Shown here one piece after another: positions 1,325 to 60,736 of a stretch of 64,000 nucleotides of DNA. The notes under the pieces are model-generated. The model was not told where the DNA came from. It did not search any database and was given only the letters and a program-made list of their open reading frames with translations. Position 1 is the first letter of the stretch. Each line of letters starts with the position of its first letter. The position numbers were made by a program, and so were the translations under genes. The stretch spans positions 248,001 through 312,000 of the forward strand of contig JAWMAR010001141.1 of assembly GCA_036785375.1 (NCBI GenBank), written 5' to 3'. This DNA is from Leucoraja ocellata. Taxonomy: Eukaryota.

Positions 1325-1359
1325 AGTTTTATCCAAGGAGACCATGTTAGCACTGACCT

Positions 1360-3970: not shown

Positions 3971-4006
3971 CTACGGCAAGCTGTGAGGTTTTGGTTCAAT
4001 GGGTCC
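3971..4006 (-). CDS. Activating receptor A terminal exon (GPIEPKPHSLP*)
   Basis: Poly-T acceptor ttttttttgcag; phase 0 after AAG|gtatgt. Confidence 0.6.
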   Translation of the reverse strand, partial: GPIEPKPHSLP

Positions 4007-7000
4007 CTGCAAAAAAAAACTTAGAAGTCATCAGATTAATTGACTCCGGGAATTGTGCTGTATTTCACAAGGCCACTAACAACAGAATTCTGCTTCCAAT
4101 TGGCACAGTGATGCAGCTGATAGAGCTGCTGCCTCACAGCGTCCAAGAATTTGCTTGGATTTTGACTTTGATGCTATCTGTGTGGAGTTTACATGTTCTC
4201 GCTGTGGCCATGTGGGTTTCCTCCGCGAGCTCCGGTTTCCTCCCACCTCCCAAAGACTTGTGGGTTTACAGGTTAATTGGCCAATGTGAATTTCCCCTAG
4301 TGTGTTGGGAGTTGGGATGAGAGAATGGGATAACATCGAACTAATGCGTACGGGTGATCAATGGCCTGATCGGCACAAAGTGCTGGAGTAACCCAGCGAG
4401 TCTGGCACGATCTCTGGAGAAAAAGGATGGGTGACATTTCAGGTCGGGACCCTTCTTCAAACTGAAAGTAGAGGAGAGGGAACTGGGTTCAGATAAGATG
4501 GTCTGCGTTTGTTACAGTGGGTCAAAGGGCCTGTTTCCATACTGTATTTCTCTGATTCAATGACACTACAACATCTACGTCAAACACTTCAGTTCATTCT
4601 GCACACAAACATCTTGTCAAGACCAATTGATATCATCTTCGTAGAGCATTGGTTTGGCCTATATTTGTGAAGTATTTTATCTAAACGCTTTTCGTTTGTT
4701 TTATTTTATCAGCATGTTTGAAGGTATTAATGGACAGCATTTGGAAGCATTCAGCGATTCTGATGATCTCCGCAAAACATACCTTCCTTATACTTGTGAA
4801 CAATGAGACTGAGATGCTGCAGATCCCAAGCAGAGCGAAGTACAGCCAGCGTCCCACATTCCATATCGTGTAACTGAGCAAAGGGGGAAAGATACAGAAT
4901 CATTGGGAGGAAACAGACTTGTTCGTGTTGGAAACATTCATAGCCTGATTGCTGTGAAATCTCTGCATGGAGCAGGGTACAGCAACAGAGCCCAGGTAGT
5001 TCACCTGGGAAATTCCACCGTCCAGGATCTCGACCCGAAACTTCACCTATCCATGTTCTTCAGAGATGCTGCCTGACTCGCTGAGTTACTCCAGCATTTT
5101 GTGTCTAGCGTTGATAAAGTTAGATAAAAAAAGATGGGAGAAGTGACGAGTGGTATGTAAACACCAGCATGGGATCAGTTCAGTTGATCTTTTCTGTGCC
5201 TTAAATCCTATGTGATCAGATGTCATTCTGCGTAACCCTGGAACCTCATCACAATGAGGGTATTGTGTGCATTTCTGGTCGCCATGTTACAGGAAAGATT
5301 TTGTCAAGCTGGAAAGGGTGCAGAGAAGATTAACGAGGATGTTGCCGGGACTCGAGGGACTATTGTATAGGGAAAGGTTGAGCAAGCTAGGTGATTATTT
5401 CTTGGAGAGCAGGAGGACGAGGGGTGATCTTATGGAGGTGTATCATCAAGAGATGAATCAAAAATTACTCTCTCATCTTTTTTTTGTTACATTGACACAT
5501 TTGATAGAGCTGCTCTCTTAAGGCGCTAGACACCTGGGTTCGATCCTGAACTCAGGATGTTATCTGCGTGGATTTCTACATTCTCCCTATGACCGCGTGG
5601 TTCTCCTGCAGGTGCTCTGGTTTGCTCCCACATCCTAAAGGCATGCGGGTTTGGAGGTTAATTGGCATCTGTAAAATCGCCCTTAATGTGTAGGAAGTGA
5701 ACAATAAGGTGGTACAACACAGAACTAATGTTAACGGGGGGATGGAAGATCGACACAAAAAGCTGGAGTAACTCAGCGGGTCAGACAGCACCTCTGGAGA
5801 GAAGGAATAGATGATGTTTTTCATGTTGAGTCACTTCTTCAGACTGATCTATGGATGTCATGGACTCATAGGGTGGAAGGGCCTGTTTCCGTGCTGTTTC
5901 TTTAAAACTAAAAACCAAAAAAAAAGCTAGAGTCCATTTGGCCCATTGAGTGTATGCTGGATCTTAGATCATTCTCGTACTCCGATCTCAACATTTGAAT
6001 CGATTGAAGTCAATACTCTGATGCACATAACTAGCAAATGAAAGAGGAAATTCTCTTCCAATTAAATATCATAAGGAAGCAGAGCCAATCACAACAGCAG
6101 TAATAACATAATTGTACCATTCAGTGCAGGTGGATCGGGTGGAGTCATTTTGACTCTCATTGGATCTTTTTACTGTACTTGCAAAAGGTGTAGTCATCAT
6201 TCGTTCAGTCACTTTATGTTCTGTTGGGTCAAGGAAATACAATTCAGCATCACCTGCTTTTCACTTGCAATCTTAAGTTCATAGGGATAGGAGCAGAATT
6301 AGGTCATTCNNNNNNNNNNNNNNNNNNNNNNNNNNNNNNNNNNNNNNNNNNNNNNNNNNNNNNNNNNNNNNNNNNNNNNNNNNNNNNNNNNNNNNNNNNN
6401 NNNNNNNNNNNNNNNNNNNNNNNNNNNNNNNNNNNNNNNNNNNNNNNNNNNNNNNNNNNNNNNNNNNNNNNNNNNNNNNNNNNNNNNNNNNNNNNNNNNN
6501 NNNNNNNNNGTTTCCCTTTGGTATACCGCCCCGTTCCCCTCCACGCGGTCAATTCCATCCCTCCATCCCTCCCTCAATCCTGCTTCACATTTCACTGTTC
6601 CTCCTCTCCTTATCTGGTCTCCTCCTCACTTATATCACTCCACCCGTCTGTNNNNNNNNNNNNNNNNNNNNNNNNNNNNNNNNNNNNNNNNNNNNNNNNN
6701 NNNNNNNNNNNNNNNNNNNNNNNNNNNNNNNNNNNNNNNNNNNNNNNNNNNNNNNNNNNNNNNNNNNNNNNNNNNNNNNNNNNNNNNNNNNNNNNNNNNN
6801 NNNNNNNNNNNNNNNNNNNNNNNNNNNNNNNNNNNNNNGCCGTTCCCATCTCTCAATTCCAGTTTTCTCCTCCCTCATTCCGTCTGTCTGAAGGAGGGTC
6901 ACGACTCGAGTGTTCAAGAAGGAACTGCAGATGCTGGAAGATCGAAGGTACACAAAAAATGCTGGAGAAACTCAGCGGGTGCAGCAGCATCTATGGAGCG

Positions 7001-10000
7001 AAGGAAATAGGCGACATTTCGGGCCGAAACCCTTCTTCAGACTCGAGTTGGTTTTGTCCATTGCCTCCACAGATGCTACCTGACCCGCTAAGTTCTTCCA
7101 GCACTTATGGTTTTGTTCACGTGTCGTACACCTGTCCAATGTTCGGTGGCTATAGAGAGAGGCTATAGTTGTGCTTGGATTAAGTGACCTGCAACAGGAA
7201 GGGAACCCACTGATGCTGATATCGGGGTGGAGACAGCGAGAGATATTGTCAGTCTGAGAATCGCAGAAACTCGGGGAAGCTGGAGGTCGCCGGGAGTTTC
7301 CTGAAAGGTCTGATTAGGATTGCTTTACTCAAATTTCCACCGAGATTGGGCCGGGTGGAGAGGCTGGCTGGCTGCCGGGCGGTGGGTGGTCAGTGGTGAG
7401 TGGCTGCTGGGGGTGGGGGCGCATTGACGGGACAGAGAGGGAGAGAGACCGCTGGGTGGGGAGAGGGTGTATGCTCCCTGAGGTGGGGGGCGGGGTGCGG
7501 GCTGGCCTGCCCCGGGAGTATTGAATGCAGTCTGTTGAACTCACGGGACTGATTCCCTGTTTATGATTCTCCAGGTATTCAGACCAGACCACTTGTTTCT
7601 ACCTGATCTGTCGGATTATTAGTTTTAGTGGGAATGCAAACCTCTGACAGGGTGACATTTCATACAGTTCAGAGGCAGCGAAATGTGCTGAGCGGGACAG
7701 AGCCGGCACTGGGTAAGAGCAACATGAGTGGGGTTTCCCGACCCCCGCCCGCTCCCCGCAGGTCTCTGCACTGCTGCGGAGCCTCGGGATATCGGTGCTG
7801 CCCTGACCCTTCCCGGAGAAACATGGATCAGCATTTCAGTGGAGACGTCAACTCAATCGCTACGAAACGTACCGTCAGATACTTGGAGATAAATGTTAAA
7901 CAATGGATCGTAGCCAGATGTAGTAATTCCACAGTTGTACCATCCAGTATCTCCAGAGCGAAGATCCTCCACAGTCACAGTAAATATTCCTCGTGCCGGG
8001 TTATCGGTGATTGACGCTCTTCCATTCCGTCCGTGTTGCCCATTTGTTTCCAATAAAACTATACAATGGCGGGTCCACCCTTGACACCAGTATTTTGTGT
8101 GTGAGAGGTACTCTGCTTCATAGTGACAATCGATTGTGATCGCTCTTCCCACAACTCCTCTTACATGTTCCTTCCCCCACACCGCACCTGAAACTGAGAG
8201 GACAAATCTTCTGAAAATGAACAGGAAAAATCAGCTGAATATTCGGAATGATGAGGGGTGTGTTGGACAACATTCACCCCGCACCAACACTGGACCAGAT
8301 CATCCATCACTGAATGGACTTAGAAACATAGAAACATAGAAATTAGGTGCAGGAGTAGGCCATTCGGCCCTTCGAGCCTGCACCGCCATTCAATATGATC
8401 ATGGCTGATCATCCAACTCAGTATCCCGTACCTGCCTTCTCTCCATACCCCCTGATCCCCTTAGCCACAAGGGCCACATCTAACTCCCTCTTAAATATAG
8501 CCAATGAACTGGCCTCAACTACCCTCTGTGGCAGAGAGTTCCAGAGATTCACCACTCTCTGCGTGAAAAACGTTCTTCTCATCTCGGTTTTAAAGGATTT
8601 CCCCTTTATCCTTAAGCTGTGACCCCTTGTCCTGGACTTCCCTAACATCGGGAACAATCTTCCTGCATCTAGCCTGTCCAACCCCTTAAGAATTTTGTAA
8701 GTTTCTATAAGATCCCCTCTCAATCTTCTAAATTCTAGAGAGTATAAACCAAGTCTATCCAGTCTTTATTCATAAGACAGTCCTGACATCCCAGGAATCA
8801 GCCTGGTGAACCGTCTCTGCACTCTCTCTATGGCAATAATGTCCTTCCTCAGATTTGGAGACCAAAACTGTACGCAATACTCCAGGTGTGGTCTCACCAA
8901 GACCCTGTACAACTGCAGTAGAACCTCTCTGCTCCTATACGCAAATCCTTTTGCAATGAAAGCTAACATACCATTCGCTTTCTTTACTGCCTGCTGCACC
9001 TGCATGCCTACCTTCAATGACTGGTGTACCATGACACCCAGGTCTCGCTGCATCTCCCCCTTTCCCAATCGGCCACCATTTAGATAATAGTCTGCTTTCC
9101 TGTTTTTGCCACCAAAATGGATAACCTCACATTTATCCACATTATACTGCATCTGCCAAACATTTGCCCACTCACCCAGCCTATCCAAGTCACCCTGCAG
9201 TCTCCTAGCATCTTCCTCACAGCTAACACTGCCCCCCAGCTTAGTGTCATCCGCAAACTTGGAGATATTGCCTTCAATTCCCTCATCCAGATCATTAATA
9301 TATATTGTAAATAGCTGGGGTCCCAGTACTGAGCCTTGGGGTACCCCACTAGTCACTGCCTGCCATTGTGAAAAGGACCCGTTTACTCCTACTCTTTGCT
9401 TCCTGTTTGCCAGCCAGTTCTCTATCCACATCAATACTGAAACCCCAATGCCTTGTGCTTTAAGTTTGTATACTAATTTCTTATGTGGGACCTTGTCGAA
9501 AGCCTTCTGGAAGTCCAGATACACCACATCCACTGGTTCTCCCCTATCCACGCTACTAGTTACATCCTCGAAAAATTCTATAAGATTCGTCAGACATGAT
9601 TTACCTTTCGTAAATCCATGCTGACTTTGTCCAATGATTTCACCACTTTCCAAATGTGCTGCTATCCCATCTTTAATAACTGACTCTAGCAGTTTCCCCA
9701 CTACCGATGTTAGACTAACTGGTCTGTAATTCCCCATTTTCTCTCTCCCTCCCTTCTTAAAAAGTGGGGTTACGTTTGCTACCCGCCAATCTTCAGGAAC
9801 TACTCCAGAATCTAAAGAGTTTTGAAAGATTATTACTAATGCATCCACTATTTCTGGAGCTACTTCCTTAAGTACTCTGGGATGCAGCCTATCTGGCCCT
9901 GGGGATTTATCGGCCTTTAATCCATTCAATTTACCCAACACCACTTCCCGGCTAACCTGGATATCACTCAATTCCTCCAACTCCTTTGACCCGCGGTCCC

Positions 10001-13000
10001 CTGCTATTTCCGGCAAATTATTTATGTCTTCCTTAGTGAAGACGGAACCAAAGTAGTTATTCAATTGGTCCGCCATATCCTTGTTCCCCATGATCAACTC
10101 CCCTGTTTCTGACTGCAAGGGACCTACATTTGTTTTAACTAATCTCTTTCTTTTCACATATCTATAAAAACTTTTGCAGTCAGTTTTTATGTTCCCTGCC
10201 AGTTTTCTTTCATAATCTATTTTTCCTTTCCTAATTAAGCCCTTTGTCCTCCTCTGCTGGTCTTTGAATTTCTCCCAGTCCTCCGGTATGCTGCTTTTTC
10301 TGGCTAATTTGTACGCATCATCCTTCGCTTTGATACTATCCCTGATTTCCCTTGTTATCCATGGATGTACTACCTTCCCTGATTTATTCTTTTGCCAAAC
10401 TGGGATGAACAATTTTTTAGTTCATCCATGCAGTCTTTAAATGTCTTCCATTGCATATCCACCGTCAACCCTTTTAGAATTAATTGCCAGTCAATCTTGG
10501 CCAATTCACGTCTCATACCCTCAAAGTTACCTTTCTTTAAGTTCAGAACCATTGTTTCTGAATTAACAATGCCACTCTCCATCCTAATGAAGAACTCAAC
10601 CATATTATGGTCAGTCTTGCCCAAGGGGGAACGACTTGCCCTCGTTTCAATTGGAAACGTCTCTGCCATCTCCAACCTAGTGGTAGGGAAACAACATCTC
10701 ATATTTCCCGTCGGCAAATTACACCTCAATGGTATGAATGTTGATATCAAGGAAACCGTACATCCCCCCCCCCCTCTGTCCATCCCTCCCCCACTCAAGT
10801 TGCACCAGCTTCTTGTTGAGTCTCATTGTCTGTAACTAGTTCTCACTTACCGCACAGCAATGGCCTGTTTCCTTTACCATTGTTACTTGTTTACATATCT
10901 TTCATTCATTTGTTCTATATCTCTCTACACAACCGTCTATACCTCTTCCATTTCCCCTACTCTGTAGAAGAGTCTAGATCTCGAAACAGCACCTATTCCT
11001 TAGTTCCATAGATGCTGTCTGACCAGCTGAGTTACTCCAGTATATTGTGTCTATCTTCCAAACCAACATTGTCTCTGCCCCCTCAGCATTGCCGGCGTTT
11101 CTATCGCTCGTCACGCTGCTGGGAGCGGCATCTCCCGGCCTTAGTGTCGGCTGGTGACTTCCCAGAAGATCCAGCAGTTGTGAATGGAAGGAGACCACAG
11201 AGTACAATATTCGGCAAATTACCTCACTATAGCTACCAACTAAATGGCTCGCTTTAATGACCGAGTGAGAAAATACGTCCAGGAAAATATATGGGATTCT
11301 GGATAGTGATCCCCTCTCACTCACAATCAGTTTCACAACAGCATCAGGGTTAAGGCTGGGCCTTGCTGAATTAGACAAAAGCACAACAGAGGCAAAACAA
11401 AATGAGAAGTAAATGATTACTCATTGCGGGAGCGCTGTTGACCAACACTCTACCCACGAGGATTAGTGAACTAACAAAATAAACATCTAAATTTTAAACA
11501 TAACGGACCTCTTGTCAATTTGAGAATTTGAAGCGTAACTAGACCAAGTGGAGACCCGTTGTGTCTGTACCCCCAGCGTGCGGTTGCGAGGGGGGGGGGG
11601 GGGGGGAGGGGGGGGGGGAGTGGCATGCGGCGTCACACACATTAACCACCCCACACACACACTAACTACCCCCTCGCACACACGCTAACTAACCCCCCCT
11701 TGTCAATATATTAATATTATTCATTTGCTCCTTTTACCCCACAACCGCCCTATCTACTGACGCATAGCCCCCAACTCGCAGGCGCGTCTAGAGAGGGGGG
11801 GGGGGGGGGGGGTTAGAGAGTGAGGGCAGAGAGAGAAGGGGGAAGAGGGAGGGAGGGGGAGAGGCAGGGGGAGAGTCAGGGAAGGAGGGGGGTACAAGGA
11901 AGGGGGAAGGGAGAGAAGAGGGGGGGGGGAGGACGGGGTGAGGGGTGGAGATGTGGGAAGAGAGAGAGAGGTGGGGGAGAGAAGGAGAGAGAGATGGGGA
12001 AGAGAGAGAGAGAGAGAGGTGGGAGAGGGGTGGGGAGAGAGATTTATTCAAAATATGGGGAACCAAGGAATGGATTTCTGAACTCCTAAGATAAATCGCT
12101 ACGGAAATTGTAAAAATCTCCGCTTTTTGTGTCAGGTTTTTGAGGAGATACGTTNNNNNNNNNNNNNNNNNNNNNNNNNNNNNNNNNNNNNNNNNNNNNN
12201 NNNNNNNNNNNNNNNNNNNNNNNNNNNNNNNNNNNNNNNNNNNNNNNNNNNNNNNNNNNNNNNNNNNNNNNNNNNNNNNNNNNNNNNNNNNNNNNNNNNN
12301 NNNNNNNNNNNNNNNNNNNNNNNNNNNNNNNNNNNNNNNNNNNNNNNNNNNNNNNNNNNNNNNNNNNNNNNNNNNNNNNNNNNNNTACACCGTTCTGTTT
12401 TCTCGTTTATAACATTGTTTACAGAGTACTATGTTTACAAATTCTGTTGTGCTGCTGCTAGTAAGGATTTCATTGTTCTAACTGGGACGTGAGTGAACAA
12501 AACACTCTTGACTCTTGACTTACTCCGCTAATGTGTGGGATAGAACTAGTGTACAGGTGATCGGTGGTCGGCGTGGACTCGGTGGGCCGAAGGGCCTGTT
12601 TCCACGCTGTATCTTTAAATTAAACTAGAAACACTAAAACCAGAGGGAGGGTAAAGAAGGGTCTCTACCCGAAACGTCACCCAATTTCTTCTATCCAGAG
12701 TTGCTGGCTGCTCCATGGAGTAACCCCGCACAATTAAAGCATGGAATAGTCTTCACCCTACCATAGTTACCCAAACAGACGCAACTAAATTTAAGGTACC
12801 TCTTTTTTCCCCAAAAACCCTTTTATACTTACGTCCAAGTCAAGAGTCAAGAGATGCTTAAGAAGGAACTGCAGATGCTGGAAAATCCCAGGTACACAAA
12901 AATGCTGGAGAAACTCAGCGGGTGCAGCAGCATCTATGGAGCGAAGGAAATAGGCAATGTTTCGGACCAAAACCCTTCTTCAGACTGATGGGGGGTGGGG

Positions 13001-15760: not shown

Positions 15761-15795
15761 CGTTTTAGATGCAGACCCCATGCTGGGACGTTTAT

Positions 15796-15903
15796 TGTTC
15801 AGCTCTTAGTCCAGAGAACTAAATAAATGCCCATCGAGAGGAAATGTTACAATATAAATGATGAAGAAAGAAACAAGGAAGCGGAATGTGAAACAAGAGT
15901 AAG
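15796..15903 (-). promoter_or_regulatory. Candidate proximal promoter of the activating gene; also ~45319-45426
   Basis: aaggaagcggaatgtgaaac (ETS and ETS-IRF-like motifs), conserved with the inhibitory paralog. Confidence 0.5.
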
Positions 15904-19439: not shown

Positions 19440-19735
19440 GCACGGTGGCACAGCGGTGGAGTTGCTGCCTTACAACATCTACAGCACCAGAGACCCAGGT
19501 TTGATCCCGACTACGGGTACAGTCTGTATAGAGTTTGTACGTACTCACCGTGACCACATGGGTTTTTTTTAGAGACCTCCGGTTTACTCCTTTCCTCAAC
19601 GTCATACAGGTGCAGGATAATTGGCTTGGTAAAATTGTAAATTGTCACCAGTGTGTGTGGGGTAGTGTTAATTGCTGGTGGTGCAGACTCGGTGGGCCGA
19701 AGGGCCTGTTTCCACGCTGTATCTCTAAACTAAAC
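19440..19735 (+). mobile_element. tRNA-derived V-SINE (copy at ~48964-49259)
   Basis: Same family motifs. Confidence 0.8.
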
Positions 19736-20310: not shown

Positions 20311-20316
20311 TTTATT
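20311..20316 (-). terminator. Candidate polyadenylation signal, inhibitory gene A (copy B: 49836-49841)
   Basis: AATAAA followed by a U-rich tract on the minus strand, ~900 nt after the stop. Confidence 0.4.
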
Positions 20317-43235: not shown

Positions 43236-43270
<35 letters not shown>

Positions 43271-50742: not shown

Positions 50743-51003
50743 CTAAGAAGTCACAGTGGCATAAATACTCTGCACAGGAGAAGGAGCTTTCTGACGGGCA
50801 AGCTGGCTGACGCTTTGAGATGTAACTTCTGAATAGGTGACATTGTCCTCCCCAGTACTGGAGTGAGACCCTGTCGATTTGCTTTGAACTTGCACTTCTG
50901 CATACACAGTTTGATATTGATTAGAACAATGGGCAGCTTCCTTGTTGCTTCGAATGTCTGACAGTGTTGCATAAACGATGCTCCGTTTTCCTGCTGGCAA
51001 ACC
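50743..51003 (-). CDS. Inhibitory receptor B terminal exon with ITIMs and an ITSM
   Basis: IVYATL, TVYAEV, VTYSEV, SIYATV. Confidence 0.9.
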   Translation of the reverse strand, partial: GLPAGKRSIVYATLSDIRSNKEAAHCSNQYQTVYAEVQVQSKSTGSHSSTGEDNVTYSEVTSQSVSQLARQKAPSPVQSIYATVTS

Positions 51004-54000
51004 CTGAAAAACAAAAGAGGAACCAAGGTTTGTCTGATGATTTGTGTTCAGTTTTAGTCACCATGTCATAGGAAAGATGCTGTCAAGTTGCAAAGGGTGC
51101 GGAGAAGATTTGCAAGGGTGTTGCCCAGACTCGTGGGCGTGAACTATAGGGAGAGGTTGAGCAGGCCAGGATGCTTGGAGTGCAGGAGGATGAGGGGTGA
51201 TCTGATAGAGGTGTACAAAATCATGAGAGGAAAAGATCGGGTAGATGCACAGAGCCTTTTGCCTAGAGTAGAAGAATCGAGAACCAGATGATATAGGTTT
51301 ATGATGAGGGGGGGAAAGATTTAATAGGAACCCAAGGGGTAACTTTCTACACAAAGTGTGGTGGGTGTATGGAACGAGCTGCTGTGTATGTGATCATGGC
51401 TGATCATCCAAAATTAGAACCCTGTTCCTTTGAAATAATCGTCTGATCTGTATGCATAAAATAACCATGATGCATCTTGATGCGTTTGATGATAAAGGAA
51501 CCATAGAACCATTGAAGCAGATTAGTGACTTGATTAGTGAGGTTGGATTACAGAATTTTGTAAGTTCTCAATACACGGGGAATTCATACTTTGCCGTCTT
51601 TACCTGCATTTCATTGTTATTTGCTCCGGGAGGTTTGTTCCCTTCTGATTCTGGAAAACACAATGTTAACATTGAAAGAACATGTCAGGGACATTTTTAA
51701 CCAGCCATCTTGATGCATATAGAGTAGGGAGGAACTGCAGATGCTGGTTTAAACCGAAGATGGACACAAAATGCTGGAGTAACTTAGTGGGACAGGCAGC
51801 ATCTCCGGAGAGAAGAAATGGATGGCGTTTCAGGTTGAGACCCTTCTTCAGACCGTTCTCTCCAGAGATGCCTATCCTGCTGATTTACTCCAGCATCTTC
51901 AATCTGTCAGGTGTATAACCAGCATCTGCAGTTCCTTCCTACACTTTTATTCATGAGAACCACAGGGATACCACAAGCCCAACTAGGTGGGTTACCTCTG
52001 GGTGCTCCGGTTTCCCCCTACATCCTAAAGACATGCACGCCTGTAGGTTAATTCCCACTGTAAATTGCCCCTAGTGTGTAGGCGAGGGGTAGAATCTTGG
52101 GGGAATTGATAACAACATGGAGAGAACAAAGTTGGATAAAATTAGTGTGTAGAAAGGACCTGCAGATTAATGAATTAATGAATAAGTTTATTTGCCAAGT
52201 ATTCACATACAAGGAATTTGCCTTGGTGCTCCGCCCCCGCAAGTGACAACGACAAACAGTGACAGTTAGGAATGACTAGTAACTCAATGAATCAGGCAGC
52301 ATCTCTGGACAAAAAGGTTGTGTGACATTTCAGGTCGAGACCCTTCTTCAGACTGGATAAGATTATTGTGGGACTGGAATAAAGAGATGTTTGATAAAGG
52401 GCCTGTTTCCGTGCTGTATCTCTCTCCCTCTCTGCAGGAAATGATCACATACATCATGAAAGGATGAAGGAAACATAGAAACTCACTCCTTTGTCTACAC
52501 ATTAGGCACCAAAGTAGACCAGCAAATATCACCACGAGAAGAACTCCAGCAATACTGAGGTAAATTATGGGTCTATGGGACAGAGAAAGCAAAAAGGTTA
52601 CTCTTGTTTCATCATTGATTCCTATCCTTTGGTAAAGAACAAAAGTCTAACATCTGCAGGGTATCTTTCATGAGCTCAGGATAAGTCAAGCCCAGTCAAT
52701 GGAGTGCACACATTGCTGTAATGTGGTAAACACCAAAGCCAATCTGCCCACAGCAAGTTCCACAAACAGCAGTGCGATAACGACCAATGATTGTGATGTT
52801 GGATAAAGAATAAACCCAACTCAACCCAACAGTAGCGCAGCATGGACTTGATGCCTTACAGCGCTAGAGACCCAGGTTCAATCCAGACTACAGGTGCTGT
52901 CTGTAAGGAGTTTGCATATTCTCCCTGTGATGAAGTGGGTTTTCTCCGGGTGCTCCGGTTTCCTCCCACATCACAAAGACGTGCGGGTTTGTGGGTTAAT
53001 TGGCCTTGGTAAATTGTCCTTAATTTGTAGCGAGTGGATGAAAAAGCGGGATCACATAGATCTAATATAAAAGGGTGATCGACGGACAGCGTGGACTCGG
53101 AGGAAGGAAGGATTTGTTACCATGCTGTATCTCTAAACTAAAGTAAAACTAAACTAATTGTGTGTGAGATCTGGCCAGTGGCATTGTCCGTGGTCGATAT
53201 ATCTGCCGATTGGTTTACAAATGCTCACAGCTTACAGATTTACAAAGGAAACACCCCTTGTTCAAAACCAGTGGACAGTCAATAAGTGTAGGAAGGAACT
53301 GCAGATGCTGGTTTAAACCGAAGAAGATAGAAACAAAATGCTGGAGTAACTCAACGGGAGAGGCAGCATCTCTGGAGAGAAGGAATGGGTGACAGTTGGG
53401 ATTGAGACCCTCCTTCAGGGGAGAAGGAGATACAGAGATAAGGAAGTATAAGGTGTGAAAATGAACTAATGGGGGTGGAGATCAAGGAAAATGTAGAATA
53501 GATCATTGTTAGCTGGGAGACGGTAACAACAAAGTAAACAAAGATAAAATATAATTGGGCAGAGTCAGACTGGTCGGAGTACTGGAAAGGGAATGGGATG
53601 GAGTCAGGGAAAGCAAGGGTTACTTGTAGTTGGAGAAGTCAATATTCATACAGCTGGGGTGGAAGCTGCCCAATATGAGGTGCTGTTACCCATAATTTTC
53701 GCTGATAAAGGAGGAGGCCCAGGACAGAAATGTAAGCGTGGGAATGGGAGTGGGAGTTAAAGTGTTCACCACCGGACGGTCAGGTAGGTTTAAGCGGACT
53801 GAGCGAAGGAGATCAGTGAAACGATCGCCAAGCCTGTGCGTATTCTTGCCGATATATAGGAGTCCACACCTGCAACTGTAGATGAGGTTGGAGGAGCTGC
53901 ATGTGAACCTCTACCTCACCTGAAAAGACTGTCAGGGTCCTTGGACGGATTCGATGGGGGAGGTATAGGGACAGGTGTTGCATCTCCTGCAGTTGCAGGT

Positions 54001-57000
54001 GAAAGTACTTGGGGACGGGGTAGTTTGGGTGGGAAGGGATGAGTTAACCAGGGAGATGCGGAGGGAACGGTCTCTGCAGAAAGCAGAAAGGGGTGGAAAT
54101 GGGGAGATGTGGCTAATGGTGGGTGTCAATGTCCTGCCAATTTTAACTGTTGTTTCTTTAATTTAGTTTAGTTTATTATAGTCACGTGCATCGAGGTTCA
54201 GTGAAAAACATTTGGTTGTGTGTTATCCAGTCAGCGAAAAGACTAGACACGATTACAATCAAGCTGTCACAGCATATAGATTTGTGATAAAGGGTAGAAT
54301 GTTTAGTGCAAGATAGAGTCCAATAAAGTCTGATTAAAGATAGTTGGAAGGTCCCCAATGAGGTAGATGGGAGGTCAGGGTCGCTCTCTAGCTGGTGAGG
54401 GGATGGTTCAGTTGCCTGGTAACTGCTGGGAAGAAAATGTCCCTGATGGGAGAGGGGAGAAGAGGGAGTGACCGGGGCGAGTGGTCCTTGATTATGACTC
54501 TCTGGCATTGTAAGGCAGCAACTCTACCACTGTACCACCATGCCACCCTCGACAACCTAGAGTTACTACAGTACTTTGTGTTCTACTCAAGGATCCAGCA
54601 TCCAGCCAGGTTAATTCCCGGGATGGCGGAACTGTCATATGATGAAAGAATGGAGCGTCTGGGCTTGTATTCACTGGAATTTAGAAGGATGAGAGGGTAT
54701 CTTATAGACACATATTAAATTATTAAGGGATTGGACACGCGAGATGCAGGAAACATGTTCCCGATGTTGTGGGAGTCCAGAGCCAGGGGCCACAGTTTAA
54801 GAATAAGGGGTAGGCTATTTAGAACTGAGTTGAGGAAAACTTTTCACCCAGGGAGTTGTGAATCTGGGGAATTCTTTACCTCGTAAGGCAATGCAGGCCG
54901 ATTCACTGGATACATTCAAAAGATAATTAGACATAGTTCTTAGGGCTAGCGGAATCAAGGGATATGGGGACAAGGCAGGAACGGGGTACTGATTGTGGAT
55001 GGTCAACCATGATCACATTGAATGGCGGTGCTGGCTCGAAGGGCAGAATGGACTTCTCCTGCACTATTGTCTATCCATCTATGTATCTATGTATGGATCA
55101 ACAGTTCCTTGTGTCTCCACCTCTCATATTGAAAAGCAAGGCCAATCAAAACTTAAGCAAGTGAAAATTATACCTCTTAGAGAAACTGGTCGCATGATCA
55201 TTGTTTTCGGATGTTACTTTTGTAGTTGAAGTAAATGCTACTGTTGTTGTTGTTGACGATCCAGGATTCGGTTCAGGTTCTGTTGAGAAAAGGAAATAAA
55301 AGACAATTAAAGATAGACAAAATATGCTGGAGTAACTCAGCGGGACAGGCAGCATCTCTGGAGAGAAGGAATGGGTGAAGTTTCGGGTCTGAGGATGGGT
55401 CTCGGGCCGAAACGTCACCCATTCCTTCCCTCCAGAGACACTGCCTGTCCCGCTGAATTACTCCAACATTTCAAGTTCAAGTTCACATATTGTCACGTGC
55501 ACCAATTAAGGTACAGTGATATTTGAGTTATCATACAGCCATACAAGTTTAAAAACATAACGCAATACACAATAGTTTTAACATAAACATCCACCACAGT
55601 GGAATCATCATTCCTCACTGTGATGGAAGGCAACAAGGTTCAGTCATCTTCCTCCTTTGTTTACCCGTGGTGGTCGGGGCCTTGAACCCTCAGCACTGCC
55701 ACTGCCGACGGCCCGATGTTCAAGCCCTCTCGTCGGGATGATGGAGACTCCGGAGTCGGGGCGGAACGGAAACTCTCCGCGGCTTCACGGTATTTAGTCC
55801 ACAAGCCCCGCGGTTGTAGAGCTTCCACAGCGATTCTCAGCAAAGGATCACAGCTCCGCAATGTTAAAGTCCGCGTCGCCCTTGCGGCGAAGATCCAGCC
55901 CGGTCTCCAGGAAAGGCCGCATCCATCCAGTTGTTAGTCCGCGGGGAGGGGACGGAGACGTGACACGGGGAAAGATCACATCTCTGTTCAAGAAGGAACT
56001 GCAGATGCTGGAAAATCGAAGGTACACAAAATTGCTGGAGAAACTCAGCGGGTGCAGCAGCATCTATGGAGCGAAGGAAATAGGCGACGTTTCGGGCCGA
56101 AACCCTTCTTCAGACTGATGGGGGGTGGGGGGAGAGAAGGAAGGAAAAGGGGAGGAGGAGGAGCCCGAGGGCGGGCGGATAGGAGGGTGGGAGGAGACAG
56201 CTAGAGGGTTAAGGAAGGGGAGGAGACAGCAAGGGCTAGCAAAATTGGGAGAATTCAATGTTAATGTTATCCGGACGCAAGGTCCCCAGGCGGAATATGA
56301 GGTGCTGTTCCTCCAATTTCCGCTGTTGCTCACTCTGGCAATGGAGGAGACCCAGGACAGAGAGGTCGGATTGGGAATGGGAGGGGAGTTGAAGTGCTGA
56401 GCCACCGGGAGGTCAGGTTGGTTATTGCTGACTGAGCGGAGGTGTTCGGCGAAATGATCGCCCAACCTACGCTTAGTCTCCCCGATGTAAATCAGCTGAC
56501 ACCTAGAGCAGCGGATGCAGTAGATGAGGTTGGAGAAGATGCAGGTGAACCTTTGTCGCACCTGGAACGATTGCTTGGGTCCTTGAATGGAGTCGAGGGG
56601 GGAGGTGAAGGGACAGGTGTTGCATTTCTTGCGGTTGCAACGGAAAGTACCCGGGGATGGGGTGGTGCGGGAGGGAAGGGAAGAATTGACAAGGGAGTTG
56701 CGGAGGGAGCGGTCTTTGCGGAAGGCAGACATGGGGGGAGATGGGAAGATGTGTCGAGTGGTGGGGGCACGTTGGAGGTGGCGGAAATGGCGGAGGATTA
56801 TGTGTTGTATTTGCCGGCTGATGGGGTGAAAGGTGAGGACCAGAGGGACTCTGCCCTTGTTGCGAGTGCGGGGATGGGGAGAGAGAGCAGTGTTACGGGG
56901 TATGGATGAGACCCTGTTGTGATCACATCTCTGTTGCGGTAAGTGACTGAAAACGGTTTCGCCCTCCCCTCACCCCCTCACCCCCTCCCCCTCCCCTCAC

Positions 57001-60000
57001 CCCCCCACAATAAAAAACACAGAGAGACATTAAAACATACATTTTAGACAGACTGAATATAACAAAAATGTCGAAATAACACACAGGCTGCTGGCGAGGC
57101 TGCCATCTCGGCGCCACCCAGTGACGCATCTATCTGCTCTATAGATTGTGTGTCTATGTTCGATTGAACCAGCATCTGCAGTTCTTTCCTTCACAATAAA
57201 AGACATTTCCCTGTTTGCCGTTTCATCATTATTCAAGATCCAGGGGCATCATCTGCACACTCCCAGGAGGGGTAAGAACAGAATTCGGCCAAACAGCAAA
57301 GATCCCGGCACTGATCCCTATGGTGCATCATTAAGGGCGGCACGGTGGCGCAGCTGTAGAATTGCTGCCTTACAGCGCCAGGGACCCGGGTTCGATCATG
57401 ACCACGGGTACTTGTCTGTCTGTCTGTCTGGAGTTTGTACATTCTCCCCGTGACCTGCGTGAGTTTTCTCTGAAAACTTCGGTTTCCCCCCACACTCCAA
57501 AGACGTACAGGTTTACAGGTTAATTGGTATAAATGTAAAACGTACCGTCAGATACTTGGAGCTGAACGTTAAACATTGGATCGAAGCCAGATGTAGTAAT
57601 TCCACATCTGTACCATCCTGTATCGTTAGAGTGAAGATCCTCCACAGTCACAGTAAATATTCCTTGTGTCTGGTTATCTGTGATTGACCATCTTCCACGT
57701 CTGTGTTGCCCATTTGTTTCCACTACATCTGAACACGAGTGAGTCCACCCATGACACCAGTATTTTGTGAATGAACGGTACCATGCTCCATAGTGACAAT
57801 CGATTGTGATATTTTCTCCCACAACTCCTCTTACAGGTGTCTTTGCCCACAGAGCACCTGAAACTGAGAAGAAAAATCATCAGAACATGTACAGGACAAA
57901 TCTACTTAACACAGCATTTGCTGTCCCACCCACTCTTCCCCTAATCAACGATGGGCCGAATGGTCCAACCCGTGTGTGGACATTCACTTACCCATGAGCC
58001 AAGCACAAAGTGCCCGTGTAACTCAGCAGATCTGGCAGCATCTGTGGAGGGAATGGACACGTGACGTGACGTGTCGGGTTGGGACCCTGCTTCGGCGATG
58101 AGGAAACACAGAGAGTTGTGAGTATGTGGAATTCTCTGCCCATTCTCTGGAAACTTTCAAGAGAGAGCTAGATAGGGCTCTTAAAGATAGTAGTCAGGCG
58201 ATATGGGGAGAAGGCAGGAACGGGTACTGATTGGGGATGATCAAGCATGATCACATTCAATAAACAATGGACAATAGACAATAGGTGCAGGAGTAGGGCA
58301 TTTTGCCCTTCGAGCCAACACCGCCATTCAATGTGATCATGGCTGATCATCTTCGTTCTAAATGGCTTACCCCTTATTCTTAAACTGTGGCTCCTGGTTC
58401 TGGACTCCCCCAACATCAGGAATGTGTTTCCTGCCTCTAGCGTGTCCAAGCCCTTAATAATCTTAAAATATTCTTACAATAATCTTACATGGCAGTGCTG
58501 GCTCAAAGGGCCGAATGGCCTACTCCTGTACCTATTGTCTATTGATGAGTACTGAGGCTTGTGAATCCCTACAACAACCTTATCCCCCAAATGCACGTAT
58601 ATCGTTGGCCTGTTTTATGGAGGGTAAACCTTATTTGCCATCATCCCCATCTATAAACTAGGAAATAGTCACCTACACTTCACGCTGCCTTGCAAGGCCA
58701 CCAGCATAATCATGGAGCAGTTTCATCCCAGTCACTCCTTCTTTACCTGTCTACCATTAGGCACGAGGGACAGAAGTTTGAACCCAATGCTCTAGATTCA
58801 GAGACAGTTTTCTTCCCAACCATCTTCAAGCAACTGACCCATCCTCTCACTAGCTAGAGCGCAGTCCTGACCTCCTATTTACCCCCTTGAACAATCAATA
58901 ATTGGACTTCATTGGACTAAACTAAACTAAACTAGTAAAGCAATGATACTAGATTACCGGAAATGATCTGGTGAATGAAGACAGTCAATGTTGGCCTTCA
59001 CCTGCATCTGAGCATTAAAAAAAAGAATTTACTTGGTAACAAGAAATTATTAATATTGCATGCTGATGACTTTGATGAATATGCATAGTTGACGTCCAAG
59101 AACAAGAAGGAAATGGCTACTTATTGCAAGAGCAACCCACAGCCCAAGAGGAACTGGACGTCAAACAATATCTGAACTTTAAATAACAGGAAGTGTTGTA
59201 AAATGGAGACAATTGTTTTGGCATTATTGCTTGGCTGCTGTTAGTGAGTGCAAGCAAGCAATAAAACAATGTTTTATGAATAGAAATGGTCCCTTTGCAC
59301 TTTGACACTGTTACTTTAGTTTAGTTTAGTTTAAGATGGAGCATGGAAACTGGCCCTTCGGCCCAATTTGTCCGTGCTGACCTAGTATCTTGTACACTAG
59401 GGACAATTTACATAGTCCATATTCCCTATTTATAGAGGCCAATTAACCTACAAACCCATGTGTCTTTAGGATGTGGGAGGAAACCAGAAGACTGGGGAAA
59501 AACCCATGCGGTCACAGGGAGAAGGTACTAACTCCGTACAGACGGACCCCTTAGTTAGGATTGAACCCAGATCTCTGGTACTGTAAGGCACCGCTGTGCC
59601 ACTGTCCCAGTCACTTGTAATTGTCTCTGTTTTACATTCACAGTTGCTTTGTGCTGTCAGATACATTGGCGGCCATGATTTATGTGTGGCACAGTGATGG
59701 AGACAGGAGAAGATTGGAAGACCACACTCTAATATTGAGACAAAAGAGATTGCAGATGCTGGAATCTGGAACAACAAACAGCACACTGGAAGGACTCAGT
59801 GGGTCATGGAGGTTTGAAGGCAAAAAAGTGTAAGTTGTTCTTTCAGATCGAGACCCTGCATCAGGACTGAGAGGGGACAGATATGTTTGGCAACATATAG
59901 ATGTACTAATGGGTGGGAGGGTTGGGGCTGGTTGAGGAAGATGGAACTGGATGAAGAGGATATGTTTCATAGAGAATACACAAGCAGAACATGAGATGTT

Positions 60001-60736
60001 GATTGATAGTTCAAAACTCAATGATACAAACATTACATTTTCCAATTTTGGGTAATTCACACCCTCTGGTGTTCTCCTCCCACACAAGCCCACCTGCCGA
60101 TCCTGATTCAACCTTTCCTGCCTCCCTTGCTCAGTCCCGATACAGGGTCCTCTTCACATACACAGATGCTGGCTGACCCGCTGAGTTCCTCTTTCTTTAT
60201 CCACGCCCCAATATTGTTCAGTTATCTTTACATCTGCAAGCATTTAACTATCTCCACTGCAGAAATGGTGCACAAGACCCAGATACATTCTGATCACCAA
60301 AATGAATATCAAAATAAAACTACGGAGGTTAACAAAATCTAACACAAAAACAAAAAAATAATCAGGTGGTCAGGGCGCATCTGTGGGGAGAGATAGTTAG
60401 GTTTTAGGTCGAAGGATCTCTGATCTGAAAGGGTAACTCTTTTTCTCGGCACACCTGCAAAGTATTTCCAGCATATGTAAAGGAAGGAACTGCAGATGCT
60501 GGTTTACACCGAAGATAGACACAAAATGCTGGAGTAACTCAGAGGGACAGGCAGCATCACTGGATAGAAGGTATGGGTGACATTTCGGGTCGAGACTTTT
60601 CTTCAGCCTGTCCCGCTGAGTTACTCCAGCACTTTGTGACTATCTCGTACTTCCCGTAGAGTCTGGTCACATGACCGTCCAAATCAAGCTGTTACTTACC
60701 GGGCAGGGAATAAATGAGCAGCATTGGAATCCACAT
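50743..60736 (-). CDS. Inhibitory CD300/CMRF35/pIgR-like (MDIR-like) receptor, copy B; 6 coding exons, 284 aa
   Basis: join(60700-60736,57546-57863,55174-55279,52487-52572,51604-51650,50743-51003); tail motifs IVYATL, TVYAEV, VTYSEV, SIYATV. Confidence 0.88.
51604..51650 (-). CDS. Inhibitory receptor B short cytoplasmic exon
   Basis: Paralogous to 22078-22124. Confidence 0.75.
52487..52572 (-). CDS. Inhibitory receptor B TM exon
   Basis: Same TM peptide as copy A, synonymous changes only. Confidence 0.88.
53287..54125 (-). mobile_element. Older degraded Penelope-like element (unit B only)
   Basis: AFCRDRSLR..FTCNCRRCNTCP peptide; terminal repeat at ~53287-53418. Confidence 0.8.
55174..55279 (-). 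CDS. Inhibitory receptor B stalk exon
   Basis: EPEPNPGSSTTTTVAFTSTTKVTSENNDHATSFSK; AG|gtataa, phase 2. Confidence 0.8.
55989..56920 (-). mobile_element. Penelope-like element, 3' part (GIY-YIG endonuclease + terminal repeat), copy-B-specific, 15-bp TSD
   Basis: NLIYCIRCSRCQLIYIGETKRRLGDHFAEH motif; GATCACATCTCTGTT at 55974-55988 and 56921-56935, single copy at 25428-25442. Confidence 0.93.
56083..56117 (-). ncRNA. Minimal type I hammerhead ribozyme motif of a Penelope terminal repeat
   Basis: CUGAAGA-A-GGGU(UUCG)GCCC-GAAA-CGUC; palindromic ACGU helix III; short helix I. Confidence 0.65.
57546..57863 (-). CDS. Inhibitory receptor B V-set Ig exon
   Basis: Overlaps ORF 57520-57822; 318 nt, phase 1-1. 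Confidence 0.95.

What the first reader, a model, noticed from the sequence alone, without database searches (positions are those of the whole stretch)
3971..60736. Paired activating + inhibitory CD300/pIgR-like receptor cassette amplified as a ~30 kb tandem unit
Seen: each repeat has two head-to-tail minus-strand genes with closely related V domains but opposite signalling ends. One has an Arg-containing TM and a short Tyr-free tail; the other has a neutral TM and 3-4 ITIM/ITSM motifs. They alternate strictly (inh-act-inh-act-inh). Established: paired receptors (CD300, KIR, LILR/PIR) use these architectures, and skate MDIRs have CD300/TREM/pIgR-related first domains. Inference: the duplicating unit is the activating/inhibitory pair, so 1:1 gene dosage is kept as the array expands. 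This may be an undescribed rapidly evolving paired-receptor locus in a chondrichthyan.
Basis: partly seen in the sequence, partly recalled or inferred. Interest (0 to 1): 0.85.

Follow-up and report, generated by a model that had tools for sequence, protein, structure and literature searches.

The report
Tandem activating–inhibitory skate receptor gene pairs
A skate-like genome segment carries a roughly 30 kb block, repeated head to tail, that holds one activating-type and one inhibitory-type immune receptor gene of a family already known in skates, so it is a tidy but fairly ordinary example of how such receptor clusters grow.

Summary
Self-alignment shows a ~30 kb tandem unit (two full copies and the start of a third, 94-98.7% identical). 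Each unit has two minus-strand genes.

- Gene B: leader, V, stalk, uncharged TM, a 47-nt cytoplasmic exon and a tail exon with 4 (B2) or 3 (B1) ITIM/ITSM motifs.
- Gene A: leader, V, an FCRL-like C2 exon (seen only in A2), stalk, Arg-containing TM and an 11-residue Tyr-free tail.

All junctions are AG/GT and in phase. The A chain matches a 305-aa Amblyraja radiata protein exon for exon. The B chain matches the C-terminal unit of a Rhinoraja longicauda "pIgR-like" protein.

The V domains are CD300/pIgR-type, with four aligned Cys and a Cx6C motif. A unit-specific LINE insertion with a target-site duplication, and more than two copies, argue against uncollapsed haplotypes.

Exon connectivity is therefore inferred.

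The family is not undescribed. Skate MDIRs are known activating/inhibitory CD300-like multigene receptors, and NCBI already annotates relatives. Only the cassette-wise genomic layout is new. B-type V domains also occur on activating ends elsewhere, so modules are shuffled.

The parts
1..29444 (-). Tandem unit 1 (holds the B0 leader, gene A1 and gene B1)
   Evidence: Self-blastn, collinear with unit 2 at 94-98.7% identity
29445..59415 (-). Tandem unit 2 (holds gene A2 and most of gene B2)
   Evidence: Self-blastn
59416..64000 (-). Start of tandem unit 3 (holds the B2 leader exon and promoter region)
   Evidence: 1-2431 aligns with 59416-61842 at 96.9%
60700..60757 (-). B2 exon 1: leader MVSLDKTMWIPMLLIYSLP, donor G|gtaagt, phase 1
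   Evidence: tblastn, 100% to the P0003 and P0008 leaders
57546..57863 (-). B2 exon 2: V-set Ig domain, 318 nt
   Evidence: Pfam V-set E 1.3e-9; PDB CD300f E 8e-22
55174..55279 (-). B2 exon 3: Thr/Ser-rich stalk, ends in phase 2
   Evidence: tblastn to P0003/P0005
52487..52572 (-). B2 exon 4: uncharged transmembrane segment plus RQR stop-transfer
   Evidence: 75.8% to the P0006 TM
51604..51650 (-). B2 exon 5: 47-nt cytoplasmic exon (SEGNKPPGANNNEMQ) that restores the frame between TM and tail
   Evidence: Found from the P0006 sequence
50743..51003 (-). B2 exon 6: tail with 3 ITIM-like motifs, 1 ITSM-like motif and the stop codon
   Evidence: 78% to the P0006 tail, E 2e-25
45247..45304 (-). A2 exon 1: leader MGSASKTMLVPVLLICFLP
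   Evidence: tblastn to P0001, 89.5%
39808..40128 (-). A2 exon 2: V-set Ig domain, 321 nt
   Evidence: Pfam V-set E 1.5e-11; PDB CD300f 85.5 bits, pIgR D1 56.8 bits
38077..38385 (-). A2 exon 3: C2-type Ig domain, phase 1 at both ends so it can be skipped in frame
   Evidence: Pfam Ig_2 E 3.2e-6; PDB best match FCRL5; 88% to the P0008 C2
37028..37130 (-). A2 exon 4: stalk
   Evidence: 88.9% to P0008
35726..35816 (-). A2 exon 5: Arg-containing TM (YMIWNVGRWLYFALLGICSISVSLFTSIRK)
   Evidence: 100% to P0005 and P0008
34923..34958 (-). A2 exon 6: GPNEPKPHSLP plus the stop codon
   Evidence: identical to the C-termini of P0005 and P0008
30723..30780 (-). B1 leader exon
   Evidence: 1 mismatch in 58 nt to B2
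26088..26405 (-). B1 V exon (19 of 318 nt and 15 of 105 aa differ from B2)
24630..24732 (-). B1 stalk exon, 3 nt shorter than B2, last 30 nt strongly diverged, still in frame
22985..23070 (-). B1 TM exon
22078..22124 (-). B1 47-nt cytoplasmic exon
21217..21477 (-). B1 tail exon, 3 motifs (TVCAEV replaces TVYAEV)
15724..15781 (-). A1 leader exon
   Evidence: 0 mismatches to A2
7873..8193 (-). A1 V exon
   Evidence: 5 of 321 nt differ from A2
6118..6220 (-). A1 stalk exon
4783..4873 (-). A1 Arg-TM exon (YTIWNVGRW...)
3971..4006 (-). A1 last exon GPIEPKPHSLP plus the stop codon
1289..1345 (-). Leader exon of a further B-type gene (B0) whose body lies beyond the window start
   Evidence: tblastn, 94.7% to the P0003 leader
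8322..10632 (-). LINE insertion present only in unit 1, in A1 intron 1 and 128 nt upstream of the V exon; 548-aa open RT ORF
   Evidence: target-site duplication GACTT; Pfam RVT_1 E 4.4e-33

Best explanation
The window is part of a tandem array in a rajid-skate-like genome. A ~30 kb cassette has been copied head to tail at least twice, most likely by unequal crossing-over. The cassette carries two old paralogues of the CD300/pIgR-like (MDIR-type) Ig receptor family.

Gene B encodes a type I membrane protein of about 291 aa. It has one V domain, a Thr/Ser-rich stalk, an uncharged TM and a roughly 105-aa tail with 3-4 ITIM/ITSM motifs. By inference these would be tyrosine-phosphorylated and recruit SHP-type phosphatases.

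Gene A encodes about 305 aa with the C2 exon, or about 202 aa if that phase-1 exon is skipped. It has an Arg at the outer edge of the TM and a 16-residue Tyr-free cytoplasmic stub. By inference the Arg docks an ITAM adaptor through a TM Asp.

Shown here: the duplication, the intact in-phase exon chains, the domain types and the motifs.
Inferred: splicing as modelled, expression, adaptor and phosphatase coupling, and ligand.

After duplication the units diverged unevenly. An 8.9 kb block (B 3' half, intergenic DNA, A promoter and leader) is 98.7% identical. The B 5' half (leader to TM) is 94-95% identical. The B V exon carries 17 replacement changes against 2 silent ones. This fits local gene conversion plus diversification of the ligand-binding exon.
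For: - Tandem unit and collinearity across intergenic DNA.
- Four V exons and five leaders on one strand.
- Every modelled junction is AG...GT with matching phases, and totals are multiples of three (B2 876 nt, A2 918 nt). The unit-1 copies are intact.
- A2 exon chain equals P0008 (Amblyraja radiata, 305 aa): C2 88%, stalk 89%, TM 100%, tail identical.
- B exon chain equals the C-terminal unit of P0006 (XP_078277136.1, Rhinoraja longicauda): TM 76%, 47-nt exon 81%, tail 72-78%.
- P0005 is a spliced ORF on a 1028-nt Logan contig. It carries the TM-to-tail junction TSIRK|GPNEPKPHSLP exactly as modelled.
- V domain: CD300f 81-85 bits, pIgR D1 57 bits, four Cys aligned.
- ITIM clustering P about 4e-5.
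- Against an artefact: a unit-1-only LINE insertion with a 5-bp target-site duplication, other unit-specific indels, and three unit starts.
- B V exon divergence is 6.0% against 2.7% in its flanks (Fisher p = 0.013).
Against:
- P0005 and P0008 join a B-type V (and B-type leader or stalk) to the A-type TM and tail. V-to-TM pairing in real mRNAs may therefore differ from simple nearest-exon models.
- The supporting proteins are automatic gene models. P0006 (870 aa) looks like several receptor units run together.
- The A1 C2 exon cannot be seen because its expected place is a gap.
- A LINE sits 128 nt upstream of the A1 V exon.
- B1 has lost one motif Tyr.
- dN/dS above 1 in the B V exon rests on 19 changes (p = 0.26 for N vs S) and could reflect relaxed constraint.
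- A 2014 survey reported no FcR-gamma, pIgR or FcRL homologues in shark genomes (PMC4016189, passages). The adaptor for the Arg-TM is therefore unidentified.
Confidence: 0.8

Rival explanations
1. The B-A cassette works as one modular transcription unit, or as a pool of freely recombining exon modules. On this reading a B leader/V (plus or minus the stalk) can be joined, by read-through and alternative splicing or by past exon shuffling, to the downstream A C2/stalk/Arg-TM exons. The same ectodomain would then be made with an inhibitory or an activating end, and the A/B gene borders modelled here would not be the real units.
For: B lies directly upstream of A on the same strand. The phases fit: the B V exon ends in phase 1 and the A C2 exon starts in phase 1; the B stalk ends in phase 2 and the A TM exon starts in phase 2. 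P0008 has a B-type leader (100% to B2) and V (83%), then an A-type C2, stalk, TM and tail. P0005 has a B-type V and stalk (87%), then an A-type TM and tail (100%). In the V tree, B-type V domains sit with proteins that have activating ends.
Against: P0005 and P0008 are only 81-83% identical to B1 and B2 in the V domain, so they are not products of these two genes. They may simply come from other array members or other species. A has its own leader with ATG, a good donor and a promoter-like upstream stretch homologous to that of B. AATAAA signals lie 780-902 nt downstream of the B stop codons. Automatic gene models often fuse tandem paralogues.
Confidence: 0.12
2. The repeat is an assembly artefact: uncollapsed haplotypes or a mis-scaffolded duplicate. 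Only one A-B pair would then exist at this place.
For: The window contains four N gaps. The best DNA runs held only 0.59-0.64 of the sampled words of the 5.9 kb queried. The copies are similar enough (up to 98.7%) to confuse assemblers.
Against: There are three unit starts in one contiguous stretch, not two. Divergence of 1.3-6% is far above usual heterozygosity and varies block by block. Units differ by insertions, including a 2.3 kb LINE with a target-site duplication. B1 and B2 differ at 15 of 105 V residues. The two gaps in A intron 1 sit inside both units at the same spot rather than between units. First-stage notes on neighbouring windows describe more copies beyond both ends (unchecked).
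Confidence: 0.04
3. Some or all copies are decaying duplicates that are not expressed or not functional. The intact frames would reflect only their young age.
For: Replacement changes outnumber silent ones in the V exons (B 17:2, A 4:1). B1 lost the ITSM Tyr. The B1 stalk has a scrambled 3' end. A LINE lies close to the A1 V exon. There are no RNA data.
Against: No stop, frameshift or lost splice site was found in the 23 visible exons of the four genes. Close homologues are annotated in five batoid species, and P0005 comes from a spliced transcript-like contig. An excess of replacement changes confined to the V exon, with flanks less diverged, is the usual mark of receptor diversification.
Confidence: 0.1

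Closest known systems
[quoted passage not shown] 2006, Immunogenetics 58:362; paper not held; known to me from passages of PMC3031540, and from recall)
   Same: Skate multigene family of activating and inhibitory Ig receptors. The domains resemble CD300, TREM, pIgR and, by recall, FcR homologues. Forms exist with a positively charged TM or with ITIMs. Modular mixing of domain types matches the V plus FCRL-like C2 make-up of A2 and the mosaic proteins P0005 and P0008.
   Different: MDIRs were described from cDNAs. As far as my searches show, no cassette-wise ~30 kb tandem genomic layout is in print. I could not compare directly with the MDIR1-5 sequences, so membership is inferred.
Mammalian CD300 (CMRF35/CLM) family, e.g. 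the CD300A/CD300C pair
   Same: V domain with two disulfides and a CxnC motif. This is the best single-domain PDB match (CD300f 81-85 bits, CD300a 58-68 bits). Members have either ITIM tails or a charged TM residue. The genes are clustered.
   Different: CD300 proteins have a single V domain, whereas A2 adds a C2 domain. The charged TM residue here is an Arg at the outer TM edge (motif NxxR), which I recall as the FcR-gamma-type pattern of LILRA, PIR-A and Fc-alpha-RI rather than the mid-membrane Lys or Glu of CD300b/c/e. Orthology and synteny are untested.
NCBI-annotated batoid proteins: CMRF35-like molecule 1 (Leucoraja erinacea, XP_055510915.1), 'CXADR-like membrane protein' (Amblyraja radiata, P0008), pIgR-like isoform X2 (Rhinoraja longicauda, XP_078277136.1), pIgR-like (Hemitrygon akajei, XP_072886821.1)
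   Same: Same exon modules at 70-100% identity per exon. They show the same two signalling ends.
   Different: They are automatic models with inconsistent names and no description of locus structure. Module combinations differ from those in this window.
Paired-receptor clusters that grow by tandem duplication (KIR, LILR/PIR, chicken CHIR, teleost NITR, LITR, NILT, DICP)
   Same: Activating and inhibitory members with related ectodomains, rapid copy-number change, diversifying ligand-binding exons and gene conversion (recalled general knowledge; NILT passages).
   Different: Here one activating and one inhibitory gene are copied together as a fixed cassette. Their V domains (74% identical) belong to different clades, so they are neighbours rather than a classic near-identical pair.
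Polymeric immunoglobulin receptor
   Same: The V domain aligns with all five pIgR domains, best with D1 (56.8 bits).
   Different: There is a single V domain, ITIM or Arg-TM signalling ends and no multi-V secretory component. The 'pIgR-like' label on relatives is a naming artefact.

Membership tests
CD300/pIgR-type V-set Ig domain | V-set fold signature by profile | tested here: met
   Pfam PF07686 in 4 of 4 V exons, E 3.3e-7 to 1.5e-11, all above the 26-bit cut-off
CD300/pIgR-type V-set Ig domain | Two disulfides: the canonical B-F pair plus a C-C' pair (Cx6-7C after the YWC motif) | tested here: met
   All four copies have C in ITIDC, YWC, a second C six residues later, and Y.CG. These align with the Cys of pIgR D1. 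The CxnC motif as a family trait comes from passages of bioRxiv 10.1101/2022.04.21.489081
CD300 (CMRF35) family proper | Closest solved single-domain relatives are CD300 members | tested here: met
   CD300f/CLM-1 E 8e-22 (B2) and 3e-23 (A2). CD300a and CLM-6 also match. TREM2, NKp44 and TIM are much weaker
CD300 (CMRF35) family proper | A single extracellular Ig domain | tested here: inconclusive
   B has only a V domain. A2 has an intact in-phase C2 exon that P0008 includes, but it can be skipped in frame as in P0001
CD300 (CMRF35) family proper | Orthology or conserved synteny with the mammalian CD300 locus | not testable with these tools
   Only 64 kb are visible and they hold no flanking marker genes. 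Genomic context of homologues was unavailable
Skate MDIR family | Activating (charged TM) and inhibitory (ITIM) members built from CD300/TREM/pIgR-like and FcR-like Ig modules in a skate multigene family | tested here: met
   Architecture. Family description from PMC3031540 passages
Skate MDIR family | Sequence identity with published MDIR1-5 (ABC86796 and others) | not tested
ITIM-bearing inhibitory receptor | (S/I/V/L)xYxx(I/V/L) motifs in the cytoplasmic tail behind an uncharged TM | tested here: met
   B2 has 3 ITIM-like and 1 ITSM-like motif; B1 has 3 in total. Enrichment P about 4e-5
ITIM-bearing inhibitory receptor | Tyr phosphorylation and SHP-1/SHP-2/SHIP recruitment | not testable with these tools
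   Needs biochemistry
Adaptor-coupled activating receptor | Basic residue in the TM and a short tail without signalling motifs | tested here: met
   NVGRW at the start of the hydrophobic run; the tail TSIRKGPNEPKPHSLP lacks Tyr
Adaptor-coupled activating receptor | Physical association with an ITAM adaptor (FcR-gamma, DAP12 or similar) | not testable with these tools
   A 2014 survey found no FcR-gamma in sharks (PMC4016189 passages). First-stage notes mention DAP12-like ITAM exons elsewhere in this genome (unchecked)
Polymeric Ig receptor | Several tandem V-like domains forming a secretory component | tested here: not met
   One V exon per gene
Classic paired receptors | Near-identical ectodomains on opposite signalling ends | tested here: not met
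   A and B V domains are 73-74% identical and fall in separate clades. A2 has an extra C2 domain

The most novel reading that the evidence does not exclude
The cassette may be a module-swapping device rather than two independent genes. All Ig, stalk and TM exons share compatible phases, and B sits directly upstream of A on one strand. Read-through splicing, or frequent unequal exchange between units, could therefore put one and the same B-type V domain on either the ITIM tail or the Arg-TM end. This would generate true paired receptors on demand. The mosaic proteins P0005 (B V and stalk plus A TM and tail) and P0008 (B leader and V plus A C2, stalk, TM and tail) would be its products.
Probability: 0.12. 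Interest if true: 0.7.

Novelty: new member of a known kind. Interest (0 to 1): 0.35.

Why it matters
The window gives a clean genomic picture of how an innate Ig-receptor family grows in a cartilaginous fish. An activating and an inhibitory gene are amplified together, the units are homogenised in some blocks, and the ligand-binding exon of the inhibitory gene diversifies. This extends the cDNA-level MDIR work to locus structure.

It also shows that CD300-type V domains, FCRL-like C2 domains, NxxR-type TM segments and multi-ITIM tails were already combined at the base of jawed vertebrates. This bears on an older claim that FcRL- and pIgR-like genes are absent from cartilaginous fish (PMC4016189 passages).

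It does not reveal a new kind of system. Specialists expect such clusters to expand by tandem duplication.

Tried and rejected
- Direct TM-to-tail splicing in B. The best donor (AGG A|gtgagt, phase 1) and the tail acceptor (phase 0) are out of frame. This was resolved by the 47-nt exon found through P0006.
- Word-index search with the B tail exon: no candidate. This is uninformative, because only proteins of 57-182 aa were eligible.
- RNA evidence. Expression and junctions remain untested.
- Reading the MDIR paper (PMC3701310) and a 2010 review (PMC2823954): neither is held.
- Literature searches for CD300 or MDIR with skate, shark, cartilaginous and elasmobranch terms. Only PMC3031540 is relevant. 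Supplements were closed and not consulted.
- pIgR identity was considered and rejected: there is a single V domain.
- The haplotig artefact was considered and rejected; see the rival explanations.
- dN/dS as proof of positive selection was rejected as underpowered: 19 changes, p = 0.26.
- Species identity was not established. The closest proteins are from Leucoraja erinacea and Amblyraja radiata.

Full report
**What the window is.** It is 64,000 bases at 45% G+C, with four N runs at 6310-6509, 6652-6838, 12155-12385 and 41769-42015. The closest proteins in public collections come from batoids: Rhinoraja, Mobula, Leucoraja, Amblyraja and Hemitrygon. The source is therefore most likely a rajid skate. 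I did not establish the species.

**The repeat.** blastn of the window against itself gives collinear blocks that pair 1-29444 with 29445-59415, at offsets of 28,964 to 31,927. It also pairs 1-2431 with 59416-61842. The window thus holds two complete units of about 30 kb and the first 4.6 kb of a third.

Identity differs by block:
- 98.7% over 13462-22364 / 42991-51890 (0.8-1.5% divergence per kb).
- 97.6-97.8% over the A gene body.
- 94.0-95.4% over the 5' half of gene B.

Units also differ by insertions. A 2.3 kb LINE fragment (8322-10632) is present only in unit 1. It has an open 548-aa reverse-transcriptase ORF (RVT_1, E 4.4e-33). Unit 2 shows the empty site, and the insert is flanked by a GACTT duplication.

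**Gene models.** tblastn with five batoid 'CMRF35-like' proteins located four V exons and five leader exons, all on the minus strand. I then fixed the exon borders by eye and by script.

- Gene B2: 60757-60700, 57863-57546, 55279-55174, 52572-52487, 51650-51604, 51003-50743.
- Gene A2: 45304-45247, 40128-39808, 38385-38077, 37130-37028, 35816-35726, 34958-34923.

Every intron starts with GT and ends with AG. The phases fit, and the sums are 876 and 918 nt, that is 291 and 305 codons plus a stop. The unit-1 copies (B1 30780-21217, A1 15781-3971) have the same borders and no stop or frameshift.

All comparisons were made exon by exon.

**Signalling ends.** The A TM exon encodes YMIWNVGRWLYFALLGICSISVSLFTSIRK and the last exon GPNEPKPHSLP. 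This gives an Arg at the outer edge of the hydrophobic run and no cytoplasmic Tyr.

B encodes PIIYLSIAGVLLVVIFAGLLWCLMCRQR, then K-SEGNKPPGANNNEMQ, then an 86-aa tail. The B2 tail carries IVYATL, TVYAEV, VTYSEV and SIYATV. B1 reads TVCAEV and so has three motifs. The motif occurs 128 times in 60,228 translated residues of this strand. Four in 86 aa has P of about 4e-5.

**Outside support for the exon chains.**
- A no-index phmmer search of the B tail exon against 1.84 billion representatives gave 2 proteins at E <= 0.001. P0006 is XP_078277136.1, 'pIgR-like isoform X2', from Rhinoraja longicauda (78% identity, E 2e-25). P0007 is XP_072886821.1 from Hemitrygon akajei (40%).
- The last 280 residues of P0006 run V, stalk, uncharged TM, ESEWNKPPRKYNNEMQE, then an ITIM tail. 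This led me to the 47-nt exon that puts the B TM and tail in frame.
- A search with the C2 exon gave 10 proteins out of 52 candidates. The best was P0008 from Amblyraja radiata, named 'CXADR-like membrane protein'. It is 305 aa, the same length and module order as my A2 model. Identities are C2 88%, stalk 89%, TM 100% and an identical tail.
- P0005 is a 191-aa ORF on a 1028-nt Logan contig and so is necessarily spliced. It shows the junction TSIRK|GPNEPKPHSLP.

These are homology arguments, and two of the three proteins are automatic gene models. P0006 looks like several receptor units fused together.

**Domain identity.** All four V exons pass Pfam V-set. Against solved structures the best single-domain match is CD300f/CLM-1 (81-85 bits), followed by CD300a and CLM-6. 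pIgR scores higher only because five of its domains add up; D1 alone gives 56.8 bits. TREM2, NKp44 and TIM are far weaker.

The four Cys align, and the second pair forms a Cx6C motif. Passages of bioRxiv 10.1101/2022.04.21.489081 name this as common to CD300, TREM and pIgR.

The A2 C2 exon matches Ig_2 (E 3.2e-6). Its best solved match is FCRL5 (four stretches, 138.9 bits in sum), then MALT1, FCRL4 and CD22.

**How A and B relate.** V domains are 73-74% identical between A and B, 86% between B1 and B2, and 96% between A1 and A2. At DNA level A and B share only two stretches: the V exon with about 40 flanking bases (84%), and the leader with about 130 upstream bases (68%). Everything else shared is interspersed repeat. 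A and B are therefore old paralogues, and the 30 kb duplication is young.

In a maximum-likelihood tree of 22 V domains, A1 and A2 form their own clade (100/99). B1 and B2 group with Leucoraja P0003, Logan P0005 and Amblyraja P0008 (91/89). They group more loosely with Rhinoraja P0001 and the last V of P0006 (94/92). The tree rests on 106 columns and a small, search-biased sample.

The B-type V lineage is thus found on an ITIM tail (B1, B2, P0006) and on the Arg-TM end (P0005, P0008, P0001). Modules have been exchanged. The neighbouring A gene is not the near-identical 'partner' of B that the term 'paired receptor' implies.

**Divergence pattern.**
- Between B1 and B2 the V exon differs at 19 of 318 sites, against 22 of 808 in the aligned flanks (Fisher p = 0.013). 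The split is 17 replacement to 2 silent changes (dN/dS 2.6), which is not significant on its own (p = 0.26).
- Between A1 and A2 the exon (5 of 321) and flanks (18 of 1160) are equal.
- B2 has three N-glycosylation sequons in V. B1, A1 and A2 have none.
- The last 30 nt of the B1 stalk exon are scrambled relative to B2 and 3 nt shorter, yet in frame.

**Gaps.** The two gaps at 6310-6838 lie in the A1 intron between V and stalk. Unit 1 up to 6309 matches unit 2 up to 37220, 6526-6651 matches 38585-38710, and 6839 onward matches 38766 onward. Order and orientation are therefore kept. However, unit-2 positions 37221-38584, which hold the C2 exon, have no visible counterpart.

The gaps at 12155-12385 and 41769-42015 have the same flanks in both units and lie in A intron 1.

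**Artefact check.** Several points speak against uncollapsed haplotypes: three unit starts, 1.3-6% block-wise divergence, unit-specific retroelement insertions with a target-site duplication, and 15 amino-acid differences in one V domain. First-stage notes on neighbouring windows (unchecked) describe further copies beyond both ends.

**What could not be done.** The look-up of sequencing runs listed no run on record as RNA. Expression and splice junctions therefore remain inferred.

**Comparison with what is known.** Passages of PMC3031540 say two things. [quoted passage not shown] The original paper (Cannon et al. 2006) is not held. My recollection of its abstract is that it describes one to six modular Ig domains, a positively charged TM in MDIR1, ITIMs in MDIR2/3 and similarity to FcR homologues. 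This fits the genes here, but it is recall, not a test.

NCBI already names close relatives in five batoid species. My searches found no description of a cassette-wise tandem layout in cartilaginous fish. The library lacks most subscription papers, and supplements were closed.

Passages of PMC4016189 report that a 2014 screen found no pIgR, FcR-gamma or FcRL homologues in shark genomes. The CD300/pIgR-type V and FCRL5-like C2 domains here show that related domains do exist in batoids. The adaptor for the Arg-TM stays unidentified.

**Verdict.** It is a new locus-level example of a known family and a known mode of expansion, not an undescribed system.

The most interesting open point is the evidence for module exchange. 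B-type ectodomains occur on Arg-TM ends, and the exon phases would even allow read-through splicing from B into A. I rate this at about 12%.

Noticed in passing
window 8322-10632: A 5'-truncated LINE is present in unit 1 only. It has an uninterrupted 548-aa reverse-transcriptase ORF (8766-10412), an (ATGTTTCT)n-like 3' tail and a GACTT target-site duplication. It sits 128 nt upstream of the A1 V exon. Related 3' fragments lie at 23706-24465 and 33619-34143.
   Followed up: partly
window 55146-55279 (B2) and protein P0003: If the B stalk donor is not used, the frame runs on for seven codons (..RYNFHLLKF) to a stop. The Leucoraja erinacea model XP_055510915.1 ends exactly this way. This suggests a soluble V-plus-stalk isoform, or a truncated gene model.
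   Followed up: no
window 57546-57863 versus 26088-26405: The B2 V domain has three N-glycosylation sequons (NIT, NQT, NDT). B1, A1 and A2 have none. B1 and B2 differ at 15 of 105 residues.
   Followed up: yes
window 24630-24660 versus 55174-55207: The last ~30 nt of the B1 stalk exon are almost unrelated to B2 and 3 nt shorter, while the sequence on both sides is about 95% identical. This looks like a small conversion patch from another paralogue or a local rearrangement. The frame is kept.
   Followed up: partly
window 13462-22364 and 42991-51890: An 8.9 kb block is 98.7% identical between units, against 94-96% elsewhere. It covers the B cytoplasmic exons and 3' end, the B-A intergenic DNA, the A promoter and leader, and part of A intron 1. 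Recent gene conversion or a staggered unequal crossover is the likely cause.
   Followed up: partly
window 38077-38385: The A2 C2-type Ig exon is most similar to the Ig domains of human FCRL5 among solved structures. NCBI names a Mobula relative 'Fc receptor-like protein 5'. A 2014 survey (PMC4016189 passages) had reported no FcRL homologues in cartilaginous fish.
   Followed up: partly
window 56064-56732; related copies near 1517-1907, 12860-13538, 42486-42992 and 60929-61319: A repeated element has a 222-aa ORF with a weak GIY-YIG match (E 0.005, below the Pfam cut-off). It may be a Penelope-like retroelement remnant. It occurs several times per unit in both orientations.
   Followed up: no
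window 31707-33621 and 61981-63928: About 1.9 kb is shared by units 2 and 3 (95.8%) but missing from the matching place of unit 1 (between 2688 and 3443). This is another structural difference between units.
   Followed up: no
window 12155-12385 and 41769-42015: These two N runs sit at the same position of both units with the same flanking letters. The unread or masked element is therefore part of the repeat unit, not a scaffold joint between units.
   Followed up: yes
window 45237-45420 and 60690-60869: The leader exons of A and B, plus about 130 bases upstream, are still 68% identical, including a shared GGACTAAGAGCTGA stretch just before the ATG. This may be a conserved promoter or 5'UTR element of the family.
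   Followed up: no
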